A DNA stretch of 64,000 bases, from assembly GCF_006345805.1 (NCBI RefSeq), contig NC_042999.1:166036001-166100000 (forward strand). The letters are read 5' to 3'. Positions 35,601-64,000 of this stretch are shown here, piece by piece; positions within the stretch are counted from its first letter, which is position 1, and every line of letters starts with the position of its first letter. The notes under the pieces were generated by a model that worked only from the letters and a program-made list of their open reading frames with translations, was not told the origin of the DNA and searched no databases. This DNA comes from Octopus sinensis. Taxonomy: Eukaryota. The translations under genes were made by a program, and so were the position numbers.

Positions 35601-35738
35601 ATCCTCGGACTTTTGTTTAACTTTAACACAAAACATTACACTGCCCGACAACAAGTTTTTGGTGTGTTGAATAAAGAGAGAATATCAGGAAAAAATTTGA
35701 CTGCACCATTATATATTTCCAAACTGAGATATTTGTAA
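23661..35738 (+). CDS. DUF1647-family type II membrane protein (putative glycosyltransferase), 3 coding exons, about 374 aa (354 aa from the second Met at 23805)
   Basis: join(23745..24215,30664..30780,35202..35738), both introns phase-0 GT-AG. N-terminal TM FYLVILFAASTIVAIWLL, YRPLCIQEILNRYGGVIWADSS and C-terminal GCHRYDMSAL motifs recalled from DUF1647 proteins. Confidence 0.85.
23745..24215 (+). CDS. DUF1647 gene, coding exon 1 (exon starts at 23661)
   Basis: Acceptor TTCCTTTTCAG| at 23660, 157 codons, donor ATG|GTGAGT at 24216. Confidence 0.9.
25150..27606 (+). mobile_element. 5'-truncated RTE LINE with disrupted RT and intact 3' UTR
   Basis: ORFs 25322-25846, 25863-26078, 26334-26612 and 26653-26961 give KAPGPSGITAEML, QFGFVPGKSTTDAIF, AFVDMEKAFNRV, LNADDL, FRYLG, GRGRPRKTW. 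3' UTR has tandem repeats and a (TGA)n tail. Confidence 0.95.
28200..28510 (-). mobile_element. CR1/L2-group LINE 3' end
   Basis: HNFFSSTGPALFNIVPKEIKEEKDPINFKRSLDRFLQRIPDKP...NSLLEW (RT C-terminus) followed by a short 3' UTR. Confidence 0.75.
28520..28990 (-). mobile_element. mariner transposase 5' fragment (pseudogenised)
   Basis: YEFCRGTNASQTTKNI..FGEDVANER...FEKFRSGDFTLENLPHGRP...VLDHLKQISKIKKLDKWVSRRL (WVPHEL-like motif). Confidence 0.85.
30664..30780 (+). CDS. DUF1647 gene, coding exon 2
   Basis: TTTTCTTCTAG| acceptor, 117 nt encoding LKKHCNNTKSCILTPFDFKRYPSHLKDLSTKSYRPLCIQ, donor CAG|GTAAGT. Confidence 0.9.
31774..33348 (-). mobile_element. Full-length degenerate Tc1 transposon inserted into a SINE A linker
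   Basis: TA|CACTGAACTGCAAAAGA ... TCTTTTGCGGTTCAGTG|TA (17-bp TIR, 1 mismatch, TA TSD). Transposase from ATG 32859 (MTRLSAAQREEAIGRLQAG) with FQQDNAP and SLDLNPTEHLW motifs. SINE head at 31634-31773, tail at 33349-33580. Confidence 0.95.
35202..35738 (+). CDS. DUF1647 gene, coding exon 3 (stop TAA)
   Basis: TTTTACTGTTTCAG| acceptor. EILNRYGGVIWADSSEHF...PWVRCAL..ECISP.GA...GC...RKPLFRYSGCHRYDMSALNVILGL. Confidence 0.9.
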   Translation, partial: EILNRYGGVIWADSSEHFITNKMNQSVTQAQTIGLVAWTIKEPTSSLTHPKMFQYFKTKPENYYFHRAVESSHLIVFNLDRIHHELMLPWVRCALTQECISPTGAQNVGCNYQRKPLFRYSGCHRYDMSALNVILGLLFNFNTKHYTARQQVFGVLNKERISGKNLTAPLYISKLRYL

Positions 35739-44595: not shown

Positions 44596-45013
44596 ATTAT
44601 ACCTGTACATCATCTCTAAACCTTATATATATATCAGAGACAAAAAAAAAAAAAAGAGTGATAATTGCACATTACTTTTGATGTCTGAAAAACAGTGAAT
44701 CTGGTGATTAGTCCAAAATAATTTCTACTACAATACACTTAGGGTATTGCAGTATAGGTCTCCATGAGATTGTACTGCTGCCCCCTATATGCCAAGGTTG
44801 AAACATGTTGGAGTAATGATAGTTATGGATTTATTAACAAGGAGTTTTAGTGATTTTTATTATAAATGAACATCAATAAGATGGTACAATTGCAATATGA
44901 AACAGGAACATTTAAGTCAATCATTGAAAGGTATCAACCACTGGTTATTTCAGTTAGATAATGATGATACTGCTATGGTGTTTTCTCTTTGCCAATAGTC
45001 TCCTAAAGGATGG

Positions 45014-45064
45014 TTATTCTCCAAATTTATGTTTACATGCTGTTTTCTTGGCATTTTGGATTAG
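45014..45064 (-). CDS. HDAC6-like: ZnF-UBP gene, last coding exon (LIQNAKKTACKHKFGE*)
   Basis: Acceptor TTTGTTTACTGTAG|. The KFGE end matches the HDAC6 C-terminus. PolyA-signal candidates (AATAAA on the - strand) near 44830-44860. Confidence 0.85.
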   Translation of the reverse strand, partial: LIQNAKKTACKHKFGE

Positions 45065-47689
45065 CTACAGTAAACAAACAAAAAAAAAATAATAATTAAT
45101 CAAGAATCTATAATGAAATGTTTGTGTATGTATGTATTTATTTGTACATATATGTATGTAATAAGAAGTAAAAGGGATTAAAAGATTGAGGCAGATATCA
45201 ATAAAGCTTTCAGTGTTAAAGGAATTTGGTTAGTTATATCTGACTATCAGAAACCAATAAATGCAAGTAGAATAAACATCCCAAGTAATTCCTTGCATAT
45301 GACAAATAGATCCAAATATTATTTAGAAGAATTTCAAGAAATGTGTATATAAAGAGCAAAAAAAAATAAGAATGGAAAAATCACATCTTACACTATACAA
45401 TACTAATGATCGATTCTGTTGTGTCAGCATATTTAGCTACAGAAAATTCAAAGTGAACCAAGAGAATATCTCTCGTGGATGAATTCATATTTAATATGTG
45501 ATGTGAAGGAGGGAAAAGGTGGAAGCAAAGAGAGAATTGTAGTAGTTTTACCTATTGGTTTGGAAATGGGTCGCTTTCAACGTCCATGTGCGCTATCCAT
45601 CGCTGTACAGTCTAACGCATCTCTGATGCACTGTCCACCGCCAACTGGCCACTCACGCCTCGCTGACCCTGCATGCCCACAGGCCCCACTTCCGACAGGA
45701 CATGCCTCCTCCCTCACTTCCAGTCCTTCCCTACAACACAGCCTGGCTCATAACACCACATAATAGATAGATAACTAATTGTTGTAATGTAGAATTTCTA
45801 TGTTTCTAATTGCTGTGACATAGAATATCTGTGTTTATTTTCTACTTTTTCATCATCTATTTATGTCATGAAAAGTTAAATATTAAACCAGCTTTTCTTA
45901 GAATATTAATATTTCTTCTTAACGTTCCTTTTTGTATGCATTCAACTATTAGTAGAGATATTTTCTTAGTTCACTTCAAATTTAATCAATTTTAGATTGC
46001 CTTGATAACTTTGTGTTAACATATAATTGCAGATATATCAATTTGACTGATAATTTCTGTATCTAAATATACTCACAACAGAAATAATTGTCAATATTGT
46101 ATGGTGTAATTAAAGATGTGAATTTTTCAGTCCTTATTATTGTTATATATATGTATACATGTATATTTATATATTCTATTCTTTTACTTGTTTCAGTCAT
46201 TTGACTGTGGCCATGCTGGAGCACCACCTTTAGTTGAACGAATCGACCCCCAGGACTTATTTTTTGTAAGCCTAGTACTTATTCTATCAGTCTCTTTTGC
46301 TGAATTGCTAAGTTACGGGGACATAAACAGACCAACATCGGTTGTCAAGCGATGGTGGACACACACACACACTATTAGTAGCTCATAACTATATACTGTG
46401 TGCTTCAAACAATCTCTCACTGGATGGAGTACTTTTTTTGTTGATCTTAACAGAAAAGTAAACTATGTATGGTGTATATATAGTAGAATTGGACGTTATC
46501 AAAGAAGCTTGAGAGGCGGTTGGATGGAACCTACACTCGCCTCCTTATGAGAGCTCAAAATCTCTCGTGGAAGCGCCATCCAACCAAAATGCAAATATAT
46601 GGGAAACTACCACCTGTGTCATCTCTTGTGAAAGGTAGGAGAGTCCAGTTTGCTGGACATTTTTGTAGAGCTGAAAAAGAGGTAATTTCTACTCTTCTCC
46701 TCTGGAAGCCATCTACTCGCAATACCAGAGGGCGCACACTCTCCTACCCTGATGTAATCTCCAGGGATACAGGCATCCAGCAACAGGACCTCCGTAATGC
46801 CATGATGGACCGTGAAGTCTGGCGTAGCATGGTAAATTCCATTGTCTCGACCACGGTCGAACAATGATGATGATGATGGTGTATATATATAATGTATGTG
46901 TATATGTGTGTGTGTGTGTGAGTTATAGCTCAAATATACAGAAAACAAAAGATAAAGAGAGGTGAAGGAACAACAAGCAGGAGTATCAGTTTGATGCTCG
47001 GAAGAATGGAAAATTTTTTGACATTTCGTGCCTATGCTTTTCAACAGAAAGGATTGAGAAGAAAAACATATATGAGAATTGAGAGAGTTATCAGTGTTTT
47101 ATAGAATACTTTGTAGTATCTATTCTGACTCTCCGGGCTCTGTGTTCAAATCCTGCTGGGGTTAATAAAGAAAAAAATCAGTTCAGAGCTGTGGATTGGA
47201 GAAATTGCTAGTGTTGGATGAGATGACTTGCAATGCCCCCTAATACTTTTGACCTTTAGTATCAGCAATATGAAAAACCTGCGGAAAAATTGTTACCTTA
47301 GTTTGATGAGGAGACTAACTACCAACAAACCCACCCCCACCCAAACGTCCCTGTCCCTTGGCAACAGGAGATTGGGTAGAACAATTGTGGTGTTGATGAT
47401 TACTTATTGAGGCAGAATGACTGTCCTCTTATCTCCAGACAATAAGCCTGTCTTTTTCCTTTATGGCATGGTCAACTTTAGAGAATTCTTGATTCCTTTC
47501 AGATTGTCTCTCTTTTTCATATGGAGTTGTTTTCAATTGCTATTTTGTAACTGTGACATGTTCTATAGAGTTGAAGAGAATTTTTGGGCAATCTTTCAGA
47601 GAAAGTCTATCAAAACTGAAAGTACTTGTCTGACAATCACTTACGTTTACATATTTTTTGTATATGTAATGTTTATGTGTGTGTGTGTA

Positions 47690-47728
<39 letters not shown>

Positions 47729-48623
47729 TTGCACATACATATACTTATATTAAAACATACATATATACAAAAAAAAATTCATGAATATAAGTGATTCAGC
47801 TGGAAACAAAAAAAAAAACCCAGAAAATAATTCTTTTACGGAAATTGCCAAATACTTTCAGTTTTCGATCTCTGAAAGATTGCCTAATTTTAACAAAAGA
47901 GTTTATGTTGTATGGCATTTGATGAACCTGTATTTTGTCTATCATCATCATCATCATCATCGTTTAACGTCCGCTTTCCATGCTAGCATGGGTTGGACGA
48001 TTTTGACTGAGGGCTGGCGAACCAGATGGCTGCACCAGGCTTCAATCTTGATCTGGCAGAGTTTCTACAGCTGGATGCCCTTCCTAATTATTCAAATACC
48101 TGTCACTAAGTTATTTCTTGTAGCTCACTTTTGTTTAATTTATGCAAATCATCTCGGCTATAAATGAGTTTGTCCCTTGGTTACTGGAGATAGTAAAAGA
48201 CAATTATTGTGTTGATGACACCTAAAGAAGCAGCAACACGTATCCACAACTGCCCTCTTATCTCCAGACAATAAGCTAATCGTTTTTCTTAAGAGCATGT
48301 TAACTCTGGAGAATTCTTGGTTCTTGAGACTGTCTCCCCTTGTCTTATGGAGCAGGTCTCAGTATTTGAACAATTTATGCATACACACATATAAATACGT
48401 ATCTATACACACACACATACAAATAAATACACACACACACACACACAAATAAATACACACACACACACACACATATAAATACACACACACACACACACAC
48501 ATAAATACACACACACACACACACACACAAAATACACACACACACACACACACATAAATACACACACACACACACACATAATACACACACACACACACAA
48601 CATAAATACACACACACACATAA

Positions 48624-48659
<36 letters not shown>

Positions 48660-48845
48660 TACACACACACACACACATAAATACACACACACACACACAC
48701 ATAAATACACACACACACACATAAATACACACACACACACACACATATATATACACACACACACACACATATATACACACACACACACACATAAATCACA
48801 CACACACACACACACATAAATACACAACACACACACACAATAAAT

Positions 48846-48876
<31 letters not shown>

Positions 48877-49177
48877 CACATAATACACACACACACACAC
48901 ACATAAATACACACACACACATAAATACACACACACACATAAATACACACACACACATAAATACACACACACACATATACACACACACACATAAATACAC
49001 ACACCACACACATATATATACACACACACACATTATATACACACACACATATATATACACACACACATATATACACACACACACACACATATATATACAC
49101 ACACACATATATATACACACACACATATATTACACACACACACACACATATATATACACACACACACACACATATAT

Positions 49178-49264
<87 letters not shown>

Positions 49265-52200
49265 GCATACACTTTTTAACTGTAATGGCTCTAGTCCTTT
49301 TGAGTTCAGCCATGTGGTAACACCACCTTCAAGAGTTTAGTTGATTATGTCAACCCAGTACTTATTTCTCTCTAGTTCAAGAGGGTAGCCAAGAAGTCAT
49401 GCTACTATACAAGAAATTTAAAATAATTTTGCTAATAATTATATTTTTTCTTATATTTCAGACTTCAGTCCAATGAACTAAAATTGTAGCATTTTATTTT
49501 GAATATGGATGGTTCATTGAGCATACATGCACCATTACAGAGTAAGAAACCTGCCCTTGAACTCAGTAATTATTTGTTTAATTCATTGTTTCCAAAAACA
49601 GGGCTCTGTGGTCAACTTGTAATGAGCTGGGAGGCTGTGTTCCATCCAAACCCTGGGAAAGAGGAATTGTGTTGAAGAAAGCATTCAGCAGGATGCAACA
49701 ACATCCACTAGATGCTGTTCCTGTGAGCTTGATAATCCCAAAACATCCTTACAACAACTTCAAAAGGATTTGCACAGGTACTAAAACAAGGTGCAACTGG
49801 TGCCAGAGATAAAGCTATTATATTAATAGTGACTAGTAGAATTATGCTGTTCATTTTCAAGATATGGCAAGAGACAACAATAAGTAAGGGATTTGCAGCA
49901 TATTAGGAGGTCAGGGTACTTGATTCCATGCAAAAGATTAAAGTTTTTGTTTTTTTCTCAGTGAAAATTGTGCAGGTGTTAATATAGAAATTTACCATAA
50001 TGTTGTTGTTATTTAGCCTCAAATCAACCCTGATACTGCAAACCTATCATCAAAGACATTTCAGCCTTCAGCAAACCGTCTTTTTAGGGGTAATCTAGGA
50101 CATTACAAACAATGGGTAGGGGATACTTTGGCTGCTATTTTTAGCGTGTTGAGCGACCAGGTAGAGGCTCTTTCATTGGTTTGATTGCGTGATGAGATTT
50201 TTTTACACATATATGTAATATGTATAGATATCATCGGCAGAAGTTAGAGAGTAAGTCAAAAGCTGAGATTTTCGTGTATTGGCACTTATCAAACACGAAT
50301 TTGTCCATTGTCACTCTGTAACTTCTGACAAAATAACTTCTAAAATACAAAATTTTGTCAAAAACGTTACAAGTAAACCCTGTTCTCTGTGACACATTCT
50401 ACCAGTATTGGAAGTTTGAAAGTGCTTAGTTAAAAAAATTTAACTAAAGAATCTGTATGCTAAAGTCGACCTCGGCGAAAATTGAACTCAAAATATAAAA
50501 ATAGATGAAATACCGTTAAGCATTTCGCCCAGCATACTAACGTTTCTGCGAACTTGCTGCCTTAGAAAGTAAACATTCATTTTAGAAATATATTCTTTAT
50601 TCTTATTGCTTAAGCGTTACTCCCTTACTTAACATTTTACTTCATAACTCTTTTTCTACTAACTTTTGTTCAATGTGACTAGCAATTCTGAACTCCTCAT
50701 ACATTTTTCTATCAGATAAGCCAAAGAAATGTATACTTTTCTTCCGAGGCTGAAAGAGTGTTAAGCTATTCAGACTGAATGAGATAACACATATCAATCA
50801 TCATCATCATTTAATGTTTTTCATGCTGACATGAATTAGATGGTGTGACTAGAGATGTTGAGCTGGAGAGCTGCATCAGGCTCCACTCAGTTTTGGCCTT
50901 GTTTCTATGGCTGGATGCCCTTCCTAGTGCCAAATAATTCACAGAGTGTACTGAGTGCCTTTTATGTGTCACCAGCATGGGTGTCATTCACACACCACTG
51001 GCACTAGGCCATGACCATAATCTCACTTGGCTTGATGCGTCTCCTTAAGCATGTCAATGAACCAGTGATATGCAATGTATGTATGTGTGTGTGTGAGAGA
51101 GAAAGTTTATCTATCAAACAGTGAGGAACGATTTAGCAGACAAGACACTGGACTATCTACTTATGGGTCATACATAAATTCAAACCTACTTCAGTTTCTG
51201 TGCAAAACACTTTATTCAGCATTACCTCGGCTTCACCTCACTGCCAGGAGTAGGTTACAGATTTTCTGGGCATGCTGCTTACAAAAGACCAGCATTCTGT
51301 CCAAGGAAAAATCTATCTTTCATCTAATCCACCTCATGAAACAGGCTAAACACTAATTCTTAAAAGCCTGATTATGAAGGCATTTATTAAATCACATCAA
51401 ATATGCACTCTGTTTGTTGAATGTATGCATGCATGGAGAATGGGCAGTGCTACATGTCTGAGTTGTGCTTTAACCAGTTCTTTAACTTTAAGGAAACTAG
51501 ATATATTTTCCCATCTCAATCTACATGTTGCAATTTCTACAGTTGTATGAGCCAACAAATCATCTTCAAAGCATATCCTGCCATCTGAAAATGAAGTAGA
51601 GTTACCATAAATGAAGGCAGGATGGTCAGAGAACGCTGATGATAAAAGTCGGAACAACACAGGTTTGTTTGATGAGGGCTGACCAGGGTCACACAACTAC
51701 AGCCCTTGTGGTTTGAAATAGTTAACTTATAAGTTAAACTTTTGACATTCACTTACCTCATGTTCAACATAACTGTTACATCCATAGCACCACACAGAAA
51801 GATCTGCATAGCTTAACACTATATAATGGTCAGGTTCTATTTCATGATGCTTTACCATATGTTCTTGTACATATCGACTACAGAAAACCTGTGAAATCCA
51901 GTAATTAAATATATATATATTAGTGACAATTTATTCATTATAGAGAAAGGCACATCTCTTGAAAATGGTGTCATAGTTATCCTAAGATTTACAATAAATG
52001 ATATTTAGTTGGTGGTAGTAGTGTTATTGTTTCTAAATATTACAAATAATTTCTAACAGGCTAAAGACCATAAATTTGGCAACAACAGATTGCAGGCATT
52101 TATTTTATTGACTCTGGTTAGGTTTGAACTCTGAATTTAAAAATACATAATTGATTACCAAAAGGCATTGAGTCCAGTGTTCACAACAATGAGAGAAAGA

Positions 52201-55200
52201 AACAAGTATTGAATAAGGTTGCCAAGAAGGCAAAGAATAATAAGAAATAATCATTTGAGGAACAGTTAAATGTTATTAAGAAAAATCATCATAATTATTT
52301 AGAATTGAATATATACATGAAAATGAAAAGTTAGTTTCAGAACATCTCTAGAGTTGTATACACCCTGAATTGATTACCTGTGTTATTAAAAAAACTTTTG
52401 TATGTAAATCTGAACAATTATCAGACCACATTTCAATGTCTGTGTTTTGTATAAAAAGGAAATTTTTATGTTAATTCAATTAGAGTTGAAGGGAACCAAC
52501 ATTGGTTGGATAGAAAGATCACTGAGAAATCAATAATAAAAATCTAATTTTACACAATTAAAAATATATATATATATATCTATATTGATATGTACCTTAT
52601 AGCAAGTAAGACAAACCCAATTTTCATTTGTATCCCCGCATGTTTCACATGGGGACGATGTATCAAGACCTTGTGGAGGAACACTGGTTACTTTTTCAAG
52701 ATGTGGGCACCAAGTTAAAGGTTGAACACAGAACATGGATTCCTGCTGAAAGGAGAATCATACACAAAGTATCAAAAAAAATATACTTTCTAAAATATCA
52801 CTTGTACATGTAAAAAGCAGAAAGGAATGTAATTCTTATTAATGGCCTGTAGGGACACCACATTTCATTCTGCAACCATAATATACTACAAAGTATATTA
52901 AATGCTTAAGTGTACTAGGATAGGAAACATGGAAACTAAGTCAGCACTGGCTATAATTTCTATAGAAAATATGTAGCAATAACTTTAACGACTGATGTAA
53001 TTCTTATATATAAATTTTAAAGAAAATTTGGGCAGTGTATTCCCAAACTAATATCTAAGCAAGGCATGACTGCTACACAATCTTGGCTCTCCTTCACTGT
53101 AAATATGGGATCTTGTGCTAATGTAAGTGTTCAAATATTGACATGTTCACACAAGTCTATAAAAATTAATAGAACAGTAAATGATTAAGTTGATAGTGTG
53201 CTAGACAAGTCATTTAGCTGTGAGTACTACTTGTGGGTAGAAACCAAAGAGTGAAATAGTTCGTGACAATGAAGAATGACGGCACCATAAAACTGAAGAA
53301 TTTGCAGTTAGCTTGGAGAGGAATGGACAGCCAGGTTGATATACCTTAGATACATTATGTGAAAACAATGCTTCCAATAGCAACTCTATAAACACAATGA
53401 GTTTTAGAACAATCACTACCTGAAGAACAAACTTGCCAAAGTGACTTCTCAAGTGATGAATCAATGCCACAAATGTGAGGGGTTGTGTGAAATATCTTAA
53501 GAAACAGCATGTAAAACCTTTCTCCAATTACTAACAAGTGAAAGATAATAGTGAAGTGTGTGATGGCACAATTTTTGCAGGTTTAAAGTTGATGGCAGTT
53601 TTGCTTGACTGATTTTTCATTAGAGAGATTGCTATAAGAATGCTGCCAAAGATGTCAGTGAAAGAAGTTTTCCATTCCATAACGAGAGTGATATTATGCA
53701 ATGGAATGCTAAAGTATATTATGTAATAGAAGAAATATTTCACTGCTCTGATGAAAATGGTAATATAGCCAAGAGATGGTTAAAATTTATGCTCAAGGAT
53801 TCTTCAGTTGAACAGCTAGTCAGTACACACACACACACAAAAAAATGAATTGGATAAAACGTTATGCTAGAAAAAGCAGTGCATTGAAAACTTGAATTTT
53901 ATATGATAATTACATAAATACTGACAGAAAATAACCTGTACAAAGAACATAGAAAAAGGGGAAAATATGGGAGCTTTTTCTTCTTTATTTTCCCCTGTTC
54001 TTCTTATGTTTTGCACACTACTTGCAATCTTACTAATGCCAGTGGCATGAGGAAAAAGTACTTGATTCATACTGTAAAGGGGTTGGTATTAGGAATGGCA
54101 TCCATCTGTAGAAACGATGCCAATGCAGACACTGGAGCTTGGCACAGCCCTATGGCTTGCCAGACCCTATCAAAATCATCCAACCCATGACAACAAGGAA
54201 AACATGTTAATGATGACAATAATGTATTCGCGCATTAAATTAAAATAAATTAAACTGCAAAAACCAAATAAGAATGACTTGAGCTGAAAGTTTTAAAATA
54301 CCTGAATTGTTATAGATGTGAAATGTCTAAACACATCTTCATAATTAAAATATAACAATAAGATGTAACCTAAAACCTCAGCCGAATGTGTTTGCATAAT
54401 ATATGTTTTGTAGAATGAATCCAGACTGATTATTCCAAGCAGTGTTTAGGAATTGATTTCTGAGATCAGTAAAATGCTCAAGATTTATAAAAGGAACTCA
54501 AGTTGTGTTGGTTGGCTTTTTCTGGAATATTGATTTGAGAATGAATTAACCCAGATTTAAAATTAATTTCTTGAGGATGTTACAAATGGAATTTGAAGTG
54601 AATAGTTAGAACTAGAAATTAAAACTGAAGAGATGAATTTTGATCTCCAGTGCTTGTTTACAAAGGATTGGAAATCTGAGAAAAAGACGTGGGAAAAATT
54701 TTGTAGGAAAGTGAGTAATCGTTTCAATCGATGTTCACATATTAATATTACTTATTGATTCTTTACGTGTGAGATTTAAGCTTGAGACAAGAGACTTCAA
54801 AATATATTAGCATAAAGTTAAAAGTTCAACTTCCAACAGCTGTTGACACTCTGCATAGCACAATAAAGGAATAAGGATCCACAATGGATTTCACTCTCTT
54901 ATATTGTTGCCATTATATATACACACACATAAAATTCCTAGACCACATGTAAAGGAAGGCCATCCAACTGATTACCAATTACTCATTAACAAGGTCTGGC
55001 CATAATGTCTATTTTATTGTTACAACTATGGTCTCTACTCCCCTCAACTACCCAGATGCATTTGACTGCCAACCACGCCAAACCAACAGCATTCTTCTCT
55101 CACTATATTACTGTATCAATCTTATTAAAGCTCAGCAACCACTTTGGCCAAACTTTCCTCCTGAGATCTCAGCCAATTCCCTTCCTGCTTATGTTTTCAG

Positions 55201-57014
55201 ATGCTGACTTGAAAACATTTAATCTGAATATCAAGTAAATCAATTCCACCATTCTCAGGAGGCCAGTGAAAGCTACAGGTACAACCTATTTTTCGTAGGC
55301 ATTATTGTATGGTTAAGAAGCTTGTTTTCTTACCATGTGATCTTGCATGGCATCCTAGGCAAGTGTCTTCTACTATAGTTCCAGGCCAACCAAAATCTTG
55401 TGAGCAGATTTGGTTAACAGGAACTGAAAGAAGCCCATCATGTATATATATATCTATATATATATCTATATATATATATGACGGGCTTCTTTCAGTTTCC
55501 ATCTACCAAATCCACTCACAAGGCTTTGGTCAGCCTGTGGCCATAGTAGAAGACACTTGCCCAAGGTGCCACGCAGTGGGACTGAACCCGGAACCATGTG
55601 GTTGGTAAGCAAGCTTCTTACCACACAGCCACTTCTGCACCTATATAATTATTTTCCGGATCCAGTAGAATCAAGGTACTTTAATAAAAAAAAAGCACCA
55701 AGGTAGAGTTGGGGATAGCATGATATGGAAAAGCATTCTCTATTTACTCTCATCCAGCACTGAGAAGAGGGTCAATACATAATATAGATACATTTGTATG
55801 AAAAACCATGAATGTTAAATTTTATTTTTAATTCATGTGAAGAAAATGTTTTTTTTACATGATGTAATTCATTTGTTCATCAATAAAAAACATACGAAAC
55901 TGCTATTGTGAGCTTCAACCCATTTGTGTTATTATATATATAAAACTGTAGTTGTGTGAGTGTCTGTCCCCTTCGATTTAGATTCCTAACTCCTCCCACA
56001 TTTTGCGGTGCAGTTTAACCAAATTCGGGTATCTTATAGTCGTGATTAATATCGAGCCCGTCTGGCTATTAGCGCACGTCAACGATGAGTCTACGATTTT
56101 AAAAATAATTTAACATCATTTTTTATTCCATTTTAATGCATAATTTTTCGTGTGTCGATGGCGGCGGAGTTGGCGTCCATGGTCACAGCTGCACCTGTTT
56201 GCTTCTCCCCCTTCTTCCCTCCCTCGTGAAGCTGTGGGGAAGGGAGTGTAAAGAAATCAACGTCGTAATGCGTTGTCAAGGAGACCAGCGTTCTTTTAGA
56301 ACAACGACTTCATGGCTTGAAGACACCAAAACAGAAATGGCTAAGAAAGCCCGAATTGGCATCTATAAGGGAAGTAACTCTCTAAAAATGCTTATATAGT
56401 TATTTCCCTTACAAACCCGAGCAACGCCGGGCGATACTGCTAGTTATATATATGTGTGTGTGTTTGTGTGTACCCTTGTCTAGACATCATGTAATGGTTA
56501 AAAATGAATATCACTATCATACCAGCAAAGCTGTGCATTTTCAGTCTTTCACACACACACAAAAAAAAAAAGGAACTGGCCATAGAGAAATATTACCTCC
56601 TTATTAGGAAACAGGTGAGGGTTGGCAACAGGAAGGGCATCTGACCCTCGAAAATGTGTGTCAATGTATTTCATCTAACCTTTGCAAGTATGGAAAGTGG
56701 ACATTAAATGATAATGATGATGATGTAATACATTACACGTTGCCATTCTGAAACTTAAAACATCAATTAAAATCATTATGTATATTTATCAAATGGCAAC
56801 AGTTGTTCATGATGCAGAAAAATCAATAAATGTCAAAAGCTAAGAGTTTAAGGTAGATGTCAAGTTGTTAAGGTTACCTTTTAGCAAATGAGAAAAAGAG
56901 GTTTCAAATAAATTTTCAATGAAATGTTTATAGGCATACCTTTGACATAAGGTCCATTAAATATTTATCACGCTTATCAGGTGATTTTCCACCACTGGCA
57001 CCAGCTTCAGTCAT
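45014..57014 (-). CDS. HDAC6-like: HDAC6-type ZnF-UBP (BUZ) ubiquitin-binding domain protein, 135 aa, no deacetylase domain within the window
   Basis: complement(join(45014..45064,51757..51888,52596..52745,56940..57014)), all phase-0 GT-AG introns. MTEAGASGGKSPDKRDKYLMDLMSKQESMFCVQPLTWCPHLEKVTSVPPQGLDTSSPCETCGDTNENWVCLTCYKVFCSRYVQEHMVKHHEIEPDHYIVLSYADLSVWCYGCNSYVEHELIQNAKKTACKHKFGE aligns by eye with the HDAC6 C-terminal domain. Confidence 0.85.
46483..46875 (+). mobile_element. 5'-truncated RTE-type LINE, same family as 14195-14608
   Basis: ORF 46520-46867, (TGA)n tail, 14-bp TSD ATGGTGTATATATA at 46469-46482 and 46876-46889. Confidence 0.9.
48375..49270. repeat. About 900-bp compound microsatellite: ATAAAT(AC)n units grading into (AT)n
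   Basis: Directly visible. Source of the spurious CV/VC-rich ORFs. Confidence 0.95.
51757..51888 (-). CDS. HDAC6-like: ZnF-UBP gene exon (VFCSRYVQEHMVKHH...WCYGCNSYVEHE)
   Basis: TTTCACAG| acceptor, 132 nt open, donor GAG|GTAAGT. Confidence 0.92.
52596..52745 (-). CDS. HDAC6-like: ZnF-UBP gene exon (QESMFCVQPLTWCPH...ENWVCLTCYK)
   Basis: Acceptor TTCTCCTTTCAG|CAG|GAA (NAGNAG), 150 nt, donor AAG|GTACAT. Confidence 0.92.
55303..55645. mobile_element. Two SINE A heads in inverted orientation around a TA tract
   Basis: + head at about 55303-55440, TA-rich spacer at 55441-55478, - head at 55479-55645. Confidence 0.85.
55932..56443 (+). mobile_element. Non-autonomous Helitron
   Basis: 5' TTATATATATAAAACTG..TGTCTGTC. 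3' hairpin CCCG-AGCAACGC-CGGG (56416-56431) followed by CTAG|T at 56440-56444. Confidence 0.8.
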
Positions 57015-57021
57015 CTTGAGA
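56940..57021 (-). CDS. HDAC6-like: ZnF-UBP gene, probable start-codon exon (ATG at 57014)
   Basis: Acceptor TTTTTTTTCATTTGTCAG| at 57022, TCTCAAG-ATG, 25 codons, donor AAG|GTATGC, in phase with the 52745 acceptor. Confidence 0.75.
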
Positions 57022-57482
57022 CTGACAAATGAAAAAAAAAAGAGGATAGACTGTTATAATGAATTTATTGTACACAGTGCTCAAGTCCACTACAACTCAA
57101 CAGAAAAAGTAAGCAAAACTACATGAACAGTACATAGAATATACACAGGAAGTGAGCAGTGAATAAGTCTTTAAAAAAAAAAAAAAAAAAAAAACAGAGG
57201 TGGGAGCATCAGGTGCACTGTTGGCAAATTTCAGGAAGCATGGAAGTTTTGAAGGATGTAGTGTCTTGACAGCTAATAACTGAAGCAGATAGTTTATTCC
57301 ATGGTTCAGCAATTCTGACTGAAATATATATAAATGTCTCCCCAGTTTCAAGAAGCTTTTAAAGGTTAGTGCTAAAAATCTCAAATGGATGAGAGGTAAA
57401 TCTTCTAGATAGTATGTCAGTGTATGGCTAAAAAACAAGATGGTCATGGCTAGAACGCCTTTGATCATAGGTTTGCTTAAAA

Positions 57483-58032
57483 CCCTTTAGCATTCAGATT
57501 ACTCTGTTAAACGTAATGTTTGTTTATTCACCTTGTTTAGAAGTTGAGTAAAAGGTAAAGACCCCCTTCAGTCATTAACGACCATGGGATTGCACCTAGA
57601 TGTTTACCCTCCCAAGCACAAGTCCAGGCAAGTAGTTTTATGGAAGACCAGCAGTCACCCATGCATACCAGCCTCCCCTCTCCATGCCAATGTTATCCAA
57701 GGGAAAGGGCAATGCTGATACAGTTTGGCACCAGTAATGTCACAACTCATTTCTACAGCTGAGTGAACGGGAACAATGTGAAGTAAAGTGTCTTGTTCAA
57801 GAACGCAACACACAGCCTGGTTTGGGATTCAAACTCACTACCCCATGATTGTAATCCATTGCTCTAACCATTGAGCCATTTACCTTAGAATTATTCTTGC
57901 ATTATCTTATAGCTTTGAGGTTTCAATATAATTATTTTTTTTATAATGACATTTTAGGGAAGGTGTAAGAGGCCAAATCTGGCCGGTTAGAACATACAAG
58001 AGACAGAATACTTGGACCTGATATGGCTGGTT
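57483..58032 (-). mobile_element. piggyBac-type MITE copy interrupted by a tRNA-derived SINE (about 57545-57880)
   Basis: Right end of the MITE at 57483-57545 and left part at about 57880-58032 match the 6445-6663 family. The SINE has a - strand head GGCTCAATGGTTAGAGC...GAGTTTGAATCCC. Confidence 0.65.
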
Positions 58033-58052
58033 TATATATATATATATATATA

Positions 58053-58291
58053 CTTTATTTAAAGCAGGAGAAAATTCAACAAAACCTGTTACTCTCAGTT
58101 TCCCATTGCCATTCATCGGACAGTTTTTGCTAGAAAAAACTAGCAAAAACTGTCCGATGAACGGCAACGGGAAACTCAGAGTAACAGGTTTTGTTGAATT
58201 TTCTGCTGCTTTAAATAAAGCATATTACTCTACCACTGGTATTTGAGTACTCTTTTTTCCACCTTGTTTCACATTTATGTGTTTACTCCGG
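58053..58291. mobile_element. Palindromic Penelope-type terminal repeat with hammerhead-ribozyme-like motifs
   Basis: 81-bp arms at 58053-58133 and 58140-58220 (4 mismatches, A6 loop), a unique tail to 58291, (TA)n on both sides. + strand 58150-58187 reads CTGT-CCGATGA-ACGGCAACGG-GAA-ACTC-A-GAGT-A-ACAG. Confidence 0.6.
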
Positions 58292-59464
58292 TATATATAT
58301 ATATATATATATAGAGTATGACATGCCACAGTTAATAAGAATGAGCCTCAACTCAATGACTCAGATATGAGAAATGCTAGACTGGAATGCTTTACTGCTC
58401 TAGTCACTATGAAGAAGCTTCTGGATACTAGGATACTAGTAACAAACAAAATTCAGAACAAACACCAAATTTCTTTTTCTGATGAAAAGTCTGTAATAGT
58501 GAAACTCCAAGAATGTAAAGAAATTAAGAATTCTAGTAAAATAAAATCTATGATGATTTTATCAGCTTCTGTCTATCAAATCCACGAACAAGGCTTTGGC
58601 TGACCCAAGGTTGTAGTAGTAAACACTTGCCTGAGGTGCCACACAGTGGGATTGAACCCAGAATCATGTGGTTGGGAAGCAAACTTCGTACCACATAGCC
58701 ACTCCTGTGCCTATACTTGAGTTTTGTATTTTTGTAACATCATCATTTTTTCCCTTTAGCTCAATGTAGTTTTAATATTATGTACTTGAGGTCAGGGATG
58801 CTTTATGAACATATTGAACAAGATAACCTTACGACCATATCTATGTAAGCACAGGAACAGCTGTGTGATAAAGAAGTTCATTTTTCAACCACATGGTTTT
58901 GGGTTCAGTTCCATGGCATAGTACTCCAAGTGTTTTCTACCACTGATCTGGGCAAACCAAACCCTTGTGAATGGATTTGGTTGAAAGAAATTGAAAGAAG
59001 CCCATTGTATATAAATATATGTGTTACTATCATACAAGCAGTGTTCTTTACCAATTTTCCATGAAAACATGTCCAGCGACAGGGACATATAGCCTTACTT
59101 GGAAACAGGTGAAGGTTGGCAACAAGCTGGAGAAAATCTGTGACAACAAATTCTGCCTGCACCATACATGCATGGAAGAGTGGACATTAAAATAATGATG
59201 TTGAGATATATATATATATATCTTTTACTCATTTCAGTCATTAGACTGTGGCCAAGCAGGGGCATCGCTTTCAAGAAGTTTTAATTAAATGAATTGACCC
59301 TAGTGCTTTTTTTTTTTTAAAGCATGGGACTCATTCTATTGGTCTCTTTCACTGAACTGCTAAGTTATAGGGGATGTAAACATACTAACATCAGTTGTCA
59401 AGTGGTGGTGGTGGTGGTGGGGTGGACACAGACACACATAAGTTTCTTTCAGTTTCTGTGAATA

Positions 59465-59650
59465 TTTTTTAACCTGGTAAGAAGAATCTGAGAACTGTAT
59501 ACAATTCTGAAACCCAGGAAAAACAAATTCAACAACTTAAAAGTATATTCCTCAAAAGACAATACCCAGTAACTTTAATCAATAATAGAATAGAATATGC
59601 AAAAACAATAGACATCCAAAAATTACAAAACTCAAGCAACATCTTCTGAT
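59465..59650 (+). mobile_element. Penelope-like element RT C-terminal fragment
   Basis: NLVRRI...NSETQEKQIQQLKSIFLKRQYPVTLINNRIEYAKTIDIQKL resembles the PLE thumb/linker region. Confidence 0.55.
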
Positions 59651-59658
59651 ACACTTAA

Positions 59659-59879
59659 CCCATTAGCATCTAAACTAGCTGTATTTGGCTCAATTATTCT
59701 AACTGTTTTATGTTTAAAGCAGTCAGATCTGGCTTCTCATGCTTACCTACAATGTCATTCTAAAAATAAACAATCATGTTTCTGAAATTTCAAAGCTACA
59801 AGATAATGCAGGATTAATTCAAAACAATGTGTGAATAACTAAACATTATATTTTACAGAGTAATCTGAATGCTAAAGGG
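59659..59879. mobile_element. piggyBac-type MITE (221 bp)
   Basis: TTAA|CCCATTAGCAT...ATGCTAAAGGG|TTAA, internally homologous to 6445-6663. Confidence 0.85.
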
Positions 59880-60175
59880 TTAATGCTTTATTGTATATAG
59901 CAGGACACAATCCAAGAGAAGAAATGTAAAAGCAAGTGATGCTAAAAAGCATTCAACTGACTGGAACATCAGAAAAACAAGTAATGTCTTAAGGGAATCA
60001 ACCAGTCAGAATGGTAGACTACTGTCAGATAAAAACAGTTGACTAGGATATTTGATAGACAAATGACATCCATTGACTGTCAACCAACCAAAGACTGGCC
60101 AATTGCCAGATAATAACAAATGATCAAAGTTGCTCTCTGACAGATTTATAGTTGAGCCTGTGACATTGGAGAACT

Positions 60176-60425
60176 CTGTGGAGGCACATGGCTTAGTGGT
60201 TAGGGTGTTGGATTCATGATCTCAAGATTGTGGTTTCGATCCCTGCACTGTTCAACACATTGTGTTCTTAAGTAAAACACTTCATTTCATGTTGCTTCAG
60301 TCCACTCAGCTGGCAAAAATGAGTAACACTGCAATGGACTGGCATCCTGTCCAGGTGGGGAATTTATACGTCATGAAACCGGCCCTTATGAGTCAGCATG
60401 ACTTGAAGAGGTAACTTTACCTTTT
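60176..60425 (+). mobile_element. tRNA-derived SINE with a V-SINE-like central domain
   Basis: Head GTGGAGGCACATGGCTTAGTGGTTAGG. Central GCAATGGACTGGCATCCTGTCCAGG resembles the conserved V domain. Confidence 0.65.
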
Positions 60426-60993
60426 ATCTTTTAGTGGAAACCTCCACTGTGCTCAGCCCCTGGACCATATCCTTGCTCACTGCTATTGTGGTGGAGATGG
60501 TTGTCAACAAGCGCAAGCCCAGTGGGTCAACAAGCGCAAGCCCAGTGAGTCAAAGTGGCCTGTGAAGTACATCTTCATTACCATCCTCTGGGGAAAAGCC
60601 TTTTCCATTTTGTCTGTTGGGATCATGAGACAATCTGAATTACAGTAAATCAAGAGAATCTAATACCAACTATAATGGATAGCATTAATTCCTATGAGAA
60701 ATATAAAGTGATCAGAATGTATGATAAATAAATGACATCTCGAGGTAGTCATCCAACAAGAATGCTAGGCCACAAGCAGATAAAAGCAAGTGATGTTTTT
60801 GAGTAAGGACTTGTACTTATGTCTCAAAATGTTCAAATACAAGACAATATTAGCTTGAAATATAGTTCAAATTCCACATTTAAACTAGTAAAGAAAACAA
60901 CAAACAATTCTACATCACACAACAAGACAGAGGTTGTAAAAAATATTTTTCATGCATTTGATAATATTCATATCTCCTTGAGGGTAAGTCAAA

Positions 60994-61830
60994 AATTATC
61001 TGCACTATTGTCATAACATACCTTTATAATTGACACACTGCCTTCTGCGCATGCATGTTATAGTTGGTACTATTGTGGTCACGTGATTGAAGTTTGAGCC
61101 TATGGTGCCATTTTTTGTTCTGGCTTTACAGTGTAAGCATGGCTGCTCCATTAGCAATGTGCAACAAAAAAAGAACAAAGAGTAGCAATCTGATTTCTCT
61201 GGTCAAAAGGTGTGTCAGGTGTTGAAAGTCATTGGAGGCGTTTAGCACAATATGGGGACAGTGCACTACTACTATGAGTGAATCAAGAAGTTTAAAAGTG
61301 GCCAGACAAGTGTGATGCACGAAGAGGGAGCAGGACACCCATCAACCTCCATCACTGATGAGAAAATTCAGCAAGCTCAAGAGATGGTAATGGTAAACCA
61401 TTTCACCATTACCATCTCTCAGATCACTGCTTTTTGTTCTTCTTTGGTGCACACTGCTAGTGAAGCGGCCATTCTTATACTGTAAAGCCAGAAAGAAAAA
61501 TAGTGAGATCTGGCTCAAACTTCAATCACGTGACCACAATAGTTCCAACCATGAGCACACCTGTGCAGAAGGCAGTGCGACAATAATAAAGGTATGTTAT
61601 GGTGAAAGTGCAGATAATTTATTGCAATGAAACTTATTCATCATCATCATCGTTTAATGTTCATTTTCCATGCTGGCATGGGTTGGTCAGTTTGACTGGG
61701 GTCTAGGAAGCCAGGAGGCTGCACCAGGCTCCAGTCTGATCTGGCAGTGTTTCCAGCTGCAGAAACACTTTCACCATAACAAATCTTTATTATTGTCACA
61801 CTGCCTGAACTTTCAAACTTCAATCATGTA
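60994..61830. mobile_element. mariner left ends in fold-back arrangement with transposase N-terminus
   Basis: Inverted arms at 60994-61185 and 61420-61619. ATG 61139 gives MAAPLAMCNKKEQRVAI.FLWSKGVSG..(mariner HTH). Third end fragment at 61765-61830. Confidence 0.7.
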
Positions 61831-62439
61831 CTAAGGCTCAGCAAATTGCAGATTTCTTTGACATCGTGATGCAGAAGTGAGCCTTGCAGTGATTTGTCTA
61901 GAGAAGTGGTAGTTGTGGGTGATTTATTGTGGTTTTTATAGGCCTATAAAAACCACAATAGAGTAGGTTCATCTTCAACATGTTTGATTGGCCAAAATAT
62001 AACATCAATTTAAATTAATAGAACATCATGCTGATTACGTATTTATTGCTATGTTAAATATATTTACAAAAGGATGCAATATATTTTGTAGTCAATTATC
62101 ATTTTCATTGAAGTCTAGTTTCTGTGTGTTTTTCCTTGCTAGGCAACATTACAATGTGTGTGTGTGTGTGCAGCAGGAGCAATCAGGTGCCTATTTACAC
62201 AGGTATGGTAGTCAATACTGCTACATATATATAATAATAATAGCTTGCATTTTTATGCTGAGTAAGATTGTTTGATATCGGATTTGGTTGAATAAAGCTC
62301 TGGCTTTAACAGTATATCAGTTCAACATTTTCTTTATTTGCTGAGTTTAGAAGAAGGCATAGGGCCCATGACCTTACAAGCGTTCTGAGACCAGAGAGAC
62401 TGATGTCATTAATGTTTCGTTTAAATGGTGTAAGGTTAA

Positions 62440-63010
62440 CACCTGCAGGAAAGACATGAAAGGGGATGAGATTTCAGAAGGCAATGGTTTAAAGGTTTAG
62501 TATAGGGGTTAGCATGTCCACTCCAAGGGTGAAGAAAGGTGGAAAGAAAAGTGGGATGGGGTGCCTGAGTGTGGATGTAGAAGATCTGTTGGATCTGCAG
62601 GGCAGAAGATAGGAAAGACAAAAAGGGGAGAGAAGGGGAGGGGAGACAGCACACCAGCAGGTCTGTAGTCCAGAGACTGGATGTGTCCTTTAGAGATGTA
62701 GCACTGATCTGTCGAGAGGTCTTTCTCTGGATGCAATTCAGACTGTAATGAGCATAGCAGCAGCACCATTCGAGATATGGGAGCAGTAAACTACTGTGGA
62801 ATTCCGTTGAGGCCTGCAGAGCATTAGCAGTAGTTAGGGGTTGAAATATCCTCTGACTTTAAAGAGAAGGGCTAGTCTTTGGGATGTGGTCTTAACTATG
62901 CCAAGGGTATGCTTTCGTCAGGAGAGATCTTTGGAGATAGTGAGGTGTGGCATTTGGAACGATGGTGAAAGCTTGAGTGCCGTTTAGAGATTAAGTGAGA
63001 GTGGGTGTGG
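62440..63010 (-). mobile_element. CR1/L2-type LINE 3' fragment
   Basis: IVKTTSQRLALLFKVRGYF...YCSHI.NGAAA...CIQRK corresponds to the conserved RT C-terminal region. Confidence 0.7.
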
Positions 63011-63023
63011 TGCAGTGGTGTTT

Positions 63024-63400
63024 TGGAGATATCTTTTATCTTTCACTTGTTTCAGTCATTTGACTGCGGCCATGCGGGGGCACTGCCTTGGTTTTAATCG
63101 AACAAATTACCCCCAGGACTTTTTTTAAGCGTGGGACTTATTCTAGGTCTCTTTTGACGAACAGATAAGTTACGGGGACACACCAGAACCGGCTGTTGAG
63201 CGGTGGTGGGGGACTAACACATACACAAAGATGGATATATACATACATATATGACGGGCTTCTTTCCTTTTCCGTCTATCAAATTCATTCATATAGCTTT
63301 GGTCGACCTGAGGCTATAGCAGAAGGCACTTGTCGAAGGTGCGAGGCAGAATAAACTTGGAACCATCTGGTTGGAAAGCAAGCGTATTACCACGCAACCA
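63024..63400 (-). mobile_element. SINE family A
   Basis: Reverse-complement tail and head with a TA linker. Confidence 0.8.
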
Positions 63401-63882
63401 CGCAAGCGCCTTAAAAGAGACAAATCTATATCTCTGAAAAATAAAAGTGTACCGTTTTTAAGTACATACAACGAAAGATTACCTTAATGTATATATACGA
63501 CACAGTTCTGAAATTGAAATGTGTATATGTTTCCTAAACCAAAGAAAGTAAAGAGGATTTTAGTTTTTTTAAACTCTAAGTCACTACTGAACAAGCAAAC
63601 CACTTCGATATTTTGGAGGTATGGAGAACTACATGATCTAAAGCGCTCTTTCCTTATTTAAGATAGCAAGGTGTTATTTGCGGGAGATTTCATTGGTATG
63701 TCTAGCAAAGCAAGCAAGTGCACAGAGACTCCTTTGTTCGTAGTTTTATACAAATGTGAAACTCGAGGTAATGCACAGCAAAAATTAAAAAAAAAAAAAG
63801 GAACTGTGACATCAATCCCCAAAGTCAATGAATATCTATAAAACTGTATTAAAATAACTGAGTAAAATATCCAGTTACTCAC

Positions 63883-64000
63883 CGTCGATTTAATACAGAA
63901 AACACAATATTTTGCGGCGGCGGCGGCGGCGAAAGCAATGAGACAACCCCAGTGGTTTCCTGTTCTAAGAACGAATCTCACCGGTGACAATTCTCTTGAT
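63883..64000 (-). other. Probable non-coding first exon of the ZnF-UBP transcript (continues beyond the window)
   Basis: Consensus donor ACG|GTGAGT at 63883/63882, CpG-rich with a (GCC)5 tract. Spliced to 57021 it places an in-frame TGA upstream of ATG 57014, with no intervening ATG. Confidence 0.6.

What the first reader, a model, noticed from the sequence alone, without database searches (positions are those of the whole stretch)
45014..64000. Stand-alone HDAC6-type ZnF-UBP ubiquitin-binding protein with no deacetylase domains
Seen: four phase-0 exons give a clean 135-aa ORF made of a 28-aa leader plus one ZnF-UBP domain ending at KFGE*. I found no catalytic HDAC exon between 57021 and the CpG/(GCC)n-rich exon at 63883. 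That exon, spliced to 57021, puts an in-frame stop upstream of the ATG. Established: in HDAC6 this domain binds the free C-terminal Gly-Gly of unanchored ubiquitin and drives aggresome, stress-granule and viral-uncoating functions. The Zn ligands (WCPH, CxxC, CxxC, C, HxxxHH, H, CxxC) and pocket residues equivalent to human W1143, R1155, Y1156, W1182, Y1184 and Y1189 (numbering from memory) all appear conserved. Inference: this is either a separate gene or an alternative-promoter mini-isoform of HDAC6, and could act as a catalysis-free free-ubiquitin sensor, decoy or dominant-negative of HDAC6.
Basis: partly seen in the sequence, partly recalled or inferred. Interest (0 to 1): 0.85.

Follow-up and report, generated by a model that had tools for sequence, protein, structure and literature searches.

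The report
Octopus stand-alone HDAC6-type ubiquitin-binding zinc finger
In octopus, the ubiquitin-tail-binding zinc finger that normally ends the enzyme HDAC6 is encoded by its own small four-exon gene with its own promoter, on a different chromosome from the only HDAC6-like catalytic exons found; databases already list it, misnamed as "histone deacetylase 6".

Summary
Four GT-AG, phase-0 exons on the minus strand (56940-57021, 52596-52745, 51757-51888, 45014-64) give a 135-aa protein. It is letter-for-letter RefSeq XP_029633713.1, "histone deacetylase 6 isoform X4" of Octopus sinensis.

The protein is a 25-aa leader exon plus one HDAC6-type ZnF-UBP. It matches HDAC6 in PDB at 1e-37, against 1e-11 for the best USP. 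All 12 zinc ligands and all 6 Gly-Gly pocket residues are present.

It is a separate gene, not a mini-isoform of HDAC6:
- No catalytic exon lies in the window, in the next 200 kb upstream, or anywhere on this chromosome.
- A CpG island sits at the 5' end.
- A divergent MFS transporter gene lies just beyond that island, and this arrangement is conserved in Argonauta.
- HDAC6 CD1 exons lie on another chromosome (C18). No CD2 was found in the assembly.

Short ZnF-UBP-only "HDAC6-like" entries exist in many invertebrates, but they are mixed in kind. Some are split gene models (Batillaria). Others are real and arose independently (Mya, Mytilus-like cDNAs). The cephalopod copies form one clade.

The gene is already annotated but misnamed, and I found no paper describing it. 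I rate interest as moderate. Binding of free ubiquitin C-termini is inferred, not shown. The decoy or dominant-negative idea lacks a target here.

The parts
63001..64000 (.). CpG island (observed/expected CpG 0.9-1.3). It continues about 2 kb past the window end. Flanking DNA is CpG-depleted (0.1-0.3). Promoter-like and probably bidirectional.
   Evidence: A 70-nt element about 360-425 nt beyond the window end matches the 5' end of the Argonauta MFS gene.
63883..64000 (-). Putative non-coding 5' exon with a (GCC)5 run, ending at a GACG|GTGAGT donor. Its 5' limit is unknown.
   Evidence: It has no ATG, and joining it to exon A leaves the ATG at 57014 as the first start. Not verified by transcripts.
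60430..60468 (-). Alternative 5' coding segment MVQGLSTVEVSTK of RefSeq isoforms X1 and X2.
   Evidence: The implied donor is non-canonical (AG|AT), so this isoform is doubtful.
56940..57021 (-). Exon A: 7 nt of 5'UTR plus residues 1-25 (MTEAGASGGKSPDKRDKYLMDLMSK). It is homologous to the linker just before the ZnF-UBP in full-length HDAC6.
   Evidence: The profile of the short proteins matches the pre-ZnF segment of full-length HDAC6.
52596..52745 (-). Exon B: residues 26-75, the first half of the ZnF-UBP (WCPH, CxxC, ENW, CxxC). A NAGNAG acceptor gives isoforms with or without Q26.
51757..51888 (-). Exon C: residues 76-119, the second half of the ZnF-UBP (C78, R80, Y81, H85, H89, H96, W108, C109, Y110, C112, Y115).
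45014..45064 (-). Exon D coding part: residues 120-135 (LIQNAKKTACKHKFGE) plus the TAA stop.
44830..45013 (-). Minimal 3'UTR with two AATAAA signals, at 44861 and 44835.

Best explanation
This is an independent protein-coding gene of Octopus sinensis on chromosome-scale contig C3, minus strand. It is made of what were the last four coding exons of HDAC6: the pre-ZnF linker exon plus three ZnF-UBP exons. It is transcribed from its own CpG-island promoter, which it shares head-to-head with an MFS transporter gene. The 135-aa product folds as an HDAC6-type ZnF-UBP with three zinc sites. By inference, it binds the free C-terminal RLRGG/Gly-Gly tail of unanchored ubiquitin, and possibly of other proteins ending in -GG, in the conserved aromatic/arginine pocket. 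It has no deacetylase and no known dynein-binding segment. It can therefore act only as a small soluble reader, buffer or adaptor of free ubiquitin ends, alone or in trans with partners. The stand-alone state predates the octopod-cuttlefish split. Shown: gene structure, domain identity, residue conservation, absence of linked catalytic exons, and conserved synteny. Inferred: ubiquitin binding, transcription start and cellular role.
For: Gene model and exact identity to RefSeq short isoforms.
HDAC6-type domain: (E 1e-37 against 1e-11 for USP49); AlphaFold2 mean pLDDT 81. Foldseek top hits are human and zebrafish HDAC6 ZnF-UBP, TM 0.84-0.90 and 50-57% identity.
All 12 zinc ligands and four of the six pocket residues are invariant across 16 short homologues; the Y81 and Y110 positions are not fully invariant, and octopus keeps Tyr at both.
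No HDAC exon in the window plus 200 kb upstream. None on C3 in four whole-genome searches.
HDAC6 CD1 exons (60-79% identical to mollusc CD1) lie at C18:49257063-49282204.
The HDAC6 ZnF region hits only C3.
CpG island at the 5' end.
Argonauta: a 135-aa orthologue with an MFS_1 gene 6.7 kb upstream on the opposite strand. The homologous MFS exon and a conserved 5' element lie just past the window end.
Cuttlefish exon A keeps the same Met, with an in-frame stop 3 codons upstream.
The four cephalopod sequences form one clade, support 98/98.
Against: No octopus transcript data could be read, so the 63883-57021 junction and the start site are unverified.
Exon A keeps a 3' splice acceptor and an open frame upstream of the ATG, as expected of a former internal exon. 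A link to far-away or trans exons is therefore not formally excluded.
The C18 and C3 separation rests on one assembly.
Several look-alike 'short HDAC6' entries in other molluscs are split gene models, which shows that this artefact occurs.
Ubiquitin binding is inferred only from conserved residues.
Confidence: 0.8

Rival explanations
1. It is the 3' end of an ordinary full-length HDAC6 gene. The catalytic exons would have been separated from it by mis-assembly or by incomplete annotation.
For: Exon A is homologous to an internal HDAC6 linker exon and keeps an acceptor site. In Batillaria the short model is exactly such a split: the preceding HDAC6 linker exon lies 10 kb upstream. Elysia, Nucella, Sinanodonta and Pomacea also have HDAC-only and ZnF-only models on one contig. 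The last C18 exon found ends at a splice donor, so that gene continues somewhere.
Against: Nothing catalytic lies within 200 kb upstream or anywhere on C3. An MFS gene on the opposite strand abuts the 5' CpG island in both Octopus and Argonauta. Every cephalopod annotation on record for this gene gives only short proteins: O. sinensis, O. bimaculoides, O. vulgaris, Argonauta and Acanthosepion. CD2 is missing from the whole assembly, which a simple mis-join does not explain.
Confidence: 0.08
2. It is an alternative-promoter mini-isoform of a larger HDAC6 locus, with both long and short transcripts made from one gene.
For: Several alternative 5' exons exist.
Against: It needs catalytic exons upstream on the same strand. 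None were found on the chromosome, and the upstream neighbour is a divergent MFS gene.
Confidence: 0.03
3. It is a decaying relic (unprocessed pseudogene fragment) of HDAC6 with no function of its own.
For: It is derived from a partial gene. The parent gene seems to be eroding in this lineage, since CD2 was not found.
Against: The ORF, splice sites and start codon are intact across Octopus, Argonauta and Acanthosepion, at 79% and 66% identity. Every zinc ligand and pocket residue is kept. The 5' end carries a CpG island.
Confidence: 0.04

Closest known systems
C-terminal ZnF-UBP (BUZ) domain of HDAC6 (human residues about 1108-1215, PDB 3C5K, 3GV4, 3PHD; zebrafish 5G0F)
   Same: 50-57% identical over about 103 residues. 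Same fold (TM 0.84-0.90). Same 12 zinc ligands and same Gly-Gly pocket (W1143, R1155, Y1156, W1182, Y1184, Y1189). Same C-terminal KFGE ending. The leader is homologous to the HDAC6 pre-ZnF linker.
   Different: The octopus protein is not attached to any deacetylase domain. It is a free-standing 135-aa protein from its own gene.
ZnF-UBP domains of USPs (USP5/IsoT, USP49, USP20, USP33, USP16) and BRAP2
   Same: Same Pfam family PF02148. Several of them read the free ubiquitin C-terminus (bioRxiv 10.1101/2025.09.28.679104).
   Different: Much more distant: E 1e-11 or weaker and 16-31% identity. In humans all 14 ZnF-UBPs sit inside multidomain enzymes (same preprint).
Mya arenaria 140-aa 'HDAC6-like protein' and Mytilus-type short ZnF-UBP mRNAs (database entries, uncharacterised)
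   Same: Same four-exon layout and intron positions. Same leader-plus-ZnF content. Unlinked to HDAC6 in Mya, on a different chromosome and 75.5% identical to the Mya HDAC6 tail. The cDNA-like contigs have complete ORFs with upstream in-frame stops.
   Different: They arose independently. They group with HDAC6 of their own lineage, and the AU test rejects a single clade (p 1.7e-6). Mya still has a full-length HDAC6 with its own ZnF-UBP.
Split gene models of HDAC6 in draft mollusc annotations (Batillaria BaRGS_00013208 and others)
   Same: They look identical in a protein database: short, ZnF-UBP only, named HDAC6-like.
   Different: In those cases the preceding HDAC6 exons lie a few kb upstream on the same strand. 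In octopus they do not.

Membership tests
ZnF-UBP domain family (Pfam PF02148), HDAC6 subtype | Profile match above the curated cut-off | tested here: met
   70.8 bits against a cut-off of 22.7, residues 58-119.
ZnF-UBP domain family (Pfam PF02148), HDAC6 subtype | Twelve Cys/His ligands for three zinc ions | tested here: met
   C38, H40, C58, C61, C70, C73, C78, H85, H89, H96, C109 and C112 align to human C1113 through C1186. They are invariant in 16 homologues.
ZnF-UBP domain family (Pfam PF02148), HDAC6 subtype | Pocket residues for the ubiquitin C-terminal Gly-Gly | tested here: met
   W68, R80, Y81, W108, Y110 and Y115 correspond to human W1143, R1155, Y1156, W1182, Y1184 and Y1189.
ZnF-UBP domain family (Pfam PF02148), HDAC6 subtype | Closer to HDAC6 than to USP or BRAP ZnF-UBPs, with the same fold | tested here: met
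   E 1e-37 against 1e-11. Foldseek TM 0.84-0.90 to HDAC6 against 0.70 or less to USPs.
ZnF-UBP domain family (Pfam PF02148), HDAC6 subtype | Binds free, but not C-terminally blocked, ubiquitin | not testable with these tools
   This needs ITC, FP or a pull-down.
HDAC6 (class IIb protein deacetylase), the name the gene carries in RefSeq | Tandem Hist_deacetyl (PF00850) catalytic domains in the same protein | tested here: not met
   None in the protein, in the window plus 200 kb upstream, or on contig C3.
HDAC6 (class IIb protein deacetylase), the name the gene carries in RefSeq | C-terminal ZnF-UBP | tested here: met
   This alone does not make the protein a deacetylase.

The most novel reading that the evidence does not exclude
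Coleoid cephalopods have taken HDAC6 apart. The ubiquitin-reading ZnF-UBP survives as an independent gene under a bidirectional promoter. A CD1-type catalytic gene sits on another chromosome. The CD2 domain, which is the tubulin deacetylase in other animals, has been lost. Ubiquitin sensing and deacetylation would then be uncoupled in this lineage.
Probability: 0.3. Interest if true: 0.65.

Novelty: new variant of a known kind. Interest (0 to 1): 0.45.

Why it matters
In model animals the roles of HDAC6 in aggresomes, stress granules and virus uncoating depend on one polypeptide carrying both a ubiquitin-tail reader and deacetylase domains. That holds even more if the catalytic partner is reduced to one domain on another chromosome. 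It could show what the ZnF-UBP does by itself.

The practical points are modest but real. The RefSeq name "histone deacetylase 6" for this gene is misleading. Counts of "HDAC6" in invertebrate genomes mix true stand-alone ZnF-UBP genes, independent partial duplicates and split gene models.

Tried and rejected
- I first read the 30-plus short ZnF-UBP-only hits as one conserved ancient family. I rejected this. The tree mixes them with full-length HDAC6 along species lines. The AU test rejects a single clade for the best-supported stand-alone genes. The Batillaria entry is a split gene model.
What follows C18:49282204 therefore stays unknown.
Two searches failed on the server.
- Octopus records are withheld from the look-up of encoding contigs, so there was no octopus transcript contig or O. 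bimaculoides locus to read.
- No cephalopod HDAC6 catalytic protein appeared among the best 120 hits of two protein searches. Ranking by summed two-domain score, and the length window of the search, could hide a one-domain protein, so this is only soft evidence.
- tblastx and blastn of the Argonauta upstream region against octopus were swamped by SINE-like repeats. A targeted exon comparison worked.
- Literature searches found no description of a stand-alone HDAC6-type ZnF-UBP.
Full report
**What is there.** The window is Octopus sinensis contig C3:166036001-166100000.
- Four exons on the minus strand are joined by GT-AG, phase-0 introns: 56940-57021 (ATG at 57014), 52596-52745, 51757-51888 and 45014-45064 (TAA stop).
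- AATAAA signals lie 155 and 181 nt after the stop.
- The spliced 135-aa product is identical to RefSeq XP_029633713.1, "histone deacetylase 6 isoform X4 [Octopus sinensis]".
- Every RefSeq isoform of this gene in O. sinensis and O. bimaculoides, and the one O. vulgaris entry, is 134-151 aa.
- The isoforms differ only by short alternative 5' exons and by a NAGNAG acceptor that adds or drops Q26.
The one small correction is that the leader exon encodes 25 residues, not 28.

**Domain identity.**
- Pfam finds one zf-UBP domain, 70.8 bits against a cut-off of 22.7.
- Against PDB sequences the best matches are the HDAC6 ZnF-UBP of zebrafish and human, E 1e-37 to 1e-34. The best USP domain (USP49) reaches only 1e-11.
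- The zinc ligands are C38, H40, C58, C61, C70, C73, C78, H85, H89, H96, C109 and C112.
- The pocket residues are W68, R80, Y81, W108, Y110 and Y115, equivalent to human W1143, R1155, Y1156, W1182, Y1184 and Y1189. All are present.
- All 12 zinc ligands and four of the six pocket residues are invariant in an alignment of 16 short homologues. The Y81 and Y110 positions are not fully invariant there, and octopus has Tyr at both.
- An AlphaFold2 model has mean pLDDT 81, and above 86 through the domain.
- Foldseek's top hits are HDAC6 ZnF-UBP structures at TM 0.84-0.90, including the ubiquitin and RLRGG complexes 3PHD and 3GV4.

**Separate gene or tail of HDAC6?** This was the main open point, and several lines agree.
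- tblastn with two full-length mollusc HDAC6 proteins (Mya, Solemya) finds only the two main ZnF exons (B and C). This covers the window plus 200 kb upstream, C3:166036001-166300000.
- Whole-genome searches with the Hist_deacetyl profile and with three mollusc HDAC6 proteins find no catalytic exon anywhere on C3.
- The 5' end of the gene lies in a CpG island. Observed/expected CpG is 0.9-1.3 from window position 63,000 to about 2 kb past the window end, in DNA that is otherwise CpG-depleted at 0.1-0.3.
- The GCC-rich segment that ends at the GTGAGT donor at 63883 sits in this island. It contains no ATG.
- In Argonauta hians the 135-aa orthologue has an MFS_1 transporter gene 6.7 kb upstream on the opposite strand.
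- In octopus, an exon 61% identical to that MFS gene lies about 8 kb past the window end on the plus strand. A 70-nt element matching the 5' end of the Argonauta MFS gene lies about 0.4 kb past the window end.
- The gene therefore starts at a conserved, probably bidirectional promoter, with another gene immediately upstream.
- In the cuttlefish Acanthosepion, exon A keeps the same initiator Met with a stop three codons upstream.

**Where the rest of HDAC6 is.**
- Exons 60-79% identical to CD1 of mollusc HDAC6 lie at C18:49257063-49282204. They include the N-terminal exon and the linker that follows CD1. The catalytic motifs GHH, DWDVHHG and GGY are intact.
- The last exon found ends at a splice donor, so the gene continues. 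I could not fetch more DNA.
- No CD2-type exon was found anywhere. CD2 queries hit only the HDAC4 locus on C9 and, more weakly, the CD1 exons.
- No zf-UBP hit lies on C18.
- The HDAC6 ZnF region matches only C3.
- No cephalopod protein appears among the best 120 hits of two HDAC6 searches that list dozens of other molluscs.
- Taken together, this assembly holds no canonical CD1-CD2-ZnF HDAC6. That conclusion rests on one assembly and on a search with limited sensitivity.

**Relatives.** Short ZnF-UBP-only proteins named "HDAC6-like" occur in many molluscs, amphioxus, Saccoglossus and crustaceans. They are not one family.
- In a maximum-likelihood tree they interleave with the ZnF-UBP of full-length HDAC6 along species lines. 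Mya short groups with Mya full (99/96), and Batillaria short groups with Babylonia full (99/88).
- An AU test rejects a single clade of the best-supported stand-alone genes, p 1.7e-6. The group was chosen after seeing the tree.
- Some entries are artefacts. In Batillaria the HDAC6 linker exon lies 10 kb upstream of the "short gene".
- Elysia, Nucella, Sinanodonta and Pomacea also have HDAC-only and ZnF-only models on the same contig.
- Others are real. The Mya short gene has the same four exons and intron positions as octopus. It sits on a different chromosome from Mya HDAC6 and is 75.5% identical to that protein's last 139 residues.
- Two intron-free, cDNA-like contigs that group with Mytilus carry complete short ORFs with in-frame stops upstream. 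Mytilus HDAC6 models lack a ZnF-UBP.
- The four cephalopod sequences form one clade (98/98), so the stand-alone state predates the octopod-cuttlefish split.
- The leader exon is homologous to the segment just before the ZnF-UBP in full-length HDAC6. The gene is therefore the detached last four exons of HDAC6.

**Mechanism.**
- Shown: an intact, conserved, independently promoted gene for an HDAC6-type ZnF-UBP.
- Inferred from established HDAC6 structural work (PDB 3GV4, 3PHD) and a recent survey: the protein should bind the unconjugated C-terminal Gly-Gly tail of ubiquitin. That survey found HDAC6's ZnF-UBP to be the tightest binder of the RLRGG peptide among human domains (bioRxiv 10.1101/2025.09.28.679104).
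- With no catalytic or motor-binding part, it can only read, buffer or bridge free ubiquitin ends.
- A dominant-negative role against HDAC6 is unlikely here, because no ZnF-bearing HDAC6 was found to compete with.
- A trans partnership with the C18 CD1 protein is possible but untested.

**Novelty and score.**
- The gene exists in RefSeq under a misleading name. I found no paper describing a stand-alone HDAC6-type ZnF-UBP.
- The same survey lists all human ZnF-UBPs as parts of multidomain enzymes.
- I rate it a new variant of a known kind, interest 0.45.
- The most novel reading not excluded is that coleoids have dismantled HDAC6 and lost CD2 (probability about 0.3).

Noticed in passing
G000:C18:49257063-49282204 (+), loci L010, L041, L044-L047: The only HDAC6-like catalytic exons in the genome match CD1 plus the post-CD1 linker. 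No CD2-type exon was found anywhere in the assembly with three mollusc HDAC6 queries. The last exon found ends at a splice donor.
   Followed up: partly
About 0.4-13 kb beyond the window end (C3:166100356-166112721, + strand; L019:7990-8289, L020:2395-2721): An MFS-type transporter gene is transcribed divergently from the same CpG island. One exon is 61% identical to the Argonauta MFS_1 neighbour. A second ORF gives a weak MFS_1 hit (E 1.4e-4, below the cut-off).
   Followed up: partly
window 60430-60468 (-): The N-terminal extension MVQGLSTVEVSTK of RefSeq isoforms X1 and X2 maps here. Joining it to exon A implies a non-canonical AG|AT donor. The nearby canonical GT donor would bring a TAA into frame.
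   Followed up: partly
window 48359-49330: About 1 kb of (CA)n/(TG)n-rich microsatellite lies inside the 6.7-kb last intron. It gives long spurious Cys/Val and His/Thr open frames.
   Followed up: no
window 14096-14602 (+) and 46487-46867 (+); 25310-26612 (+): Near-identical transposon-derived ORFs (…SWKRHPTKxQIYGKLPPVSSLVKGRRVQFAGH…) occur twice in the window. A LINE reverse-transcriptase fragment (RVT_1, E 7e-12) lies at 25.3-26.6 kb. A SINE-like element of about 95 nt recurs dozens of times in the 264 kb examined, including in the introns of this gene.
   Followed up: partly
window 23688-24227 (+) and 35181-35738 (+): Two long open frames (179 and 185 aa) of ordinary composition have no Pfam match. 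They may be exons of an uncharacterised downstream neighbour gene.
   Followed up: partly
related proteins P0035 (Durinskia dybowskii) and P0037: HDAC6-type ZnF-UBP domains in tandem are fused to a SIR2 (sirtuin) domain in a dinoflagellate. This pairs a different deacetylase class with the same ubiquitin-tail reader. Paratrimastix has a protein of three tandem ZnF-UBPs with no catalytic domain (P0032).
   Followed up: partly
G000:C12467:51487-52090 (+): An apparently intron-free Hist_deacetyl coding stretch sits on a small 520-kb contig. It could be a retrogene or a contaminant, and was not classified.
   Followed up: no
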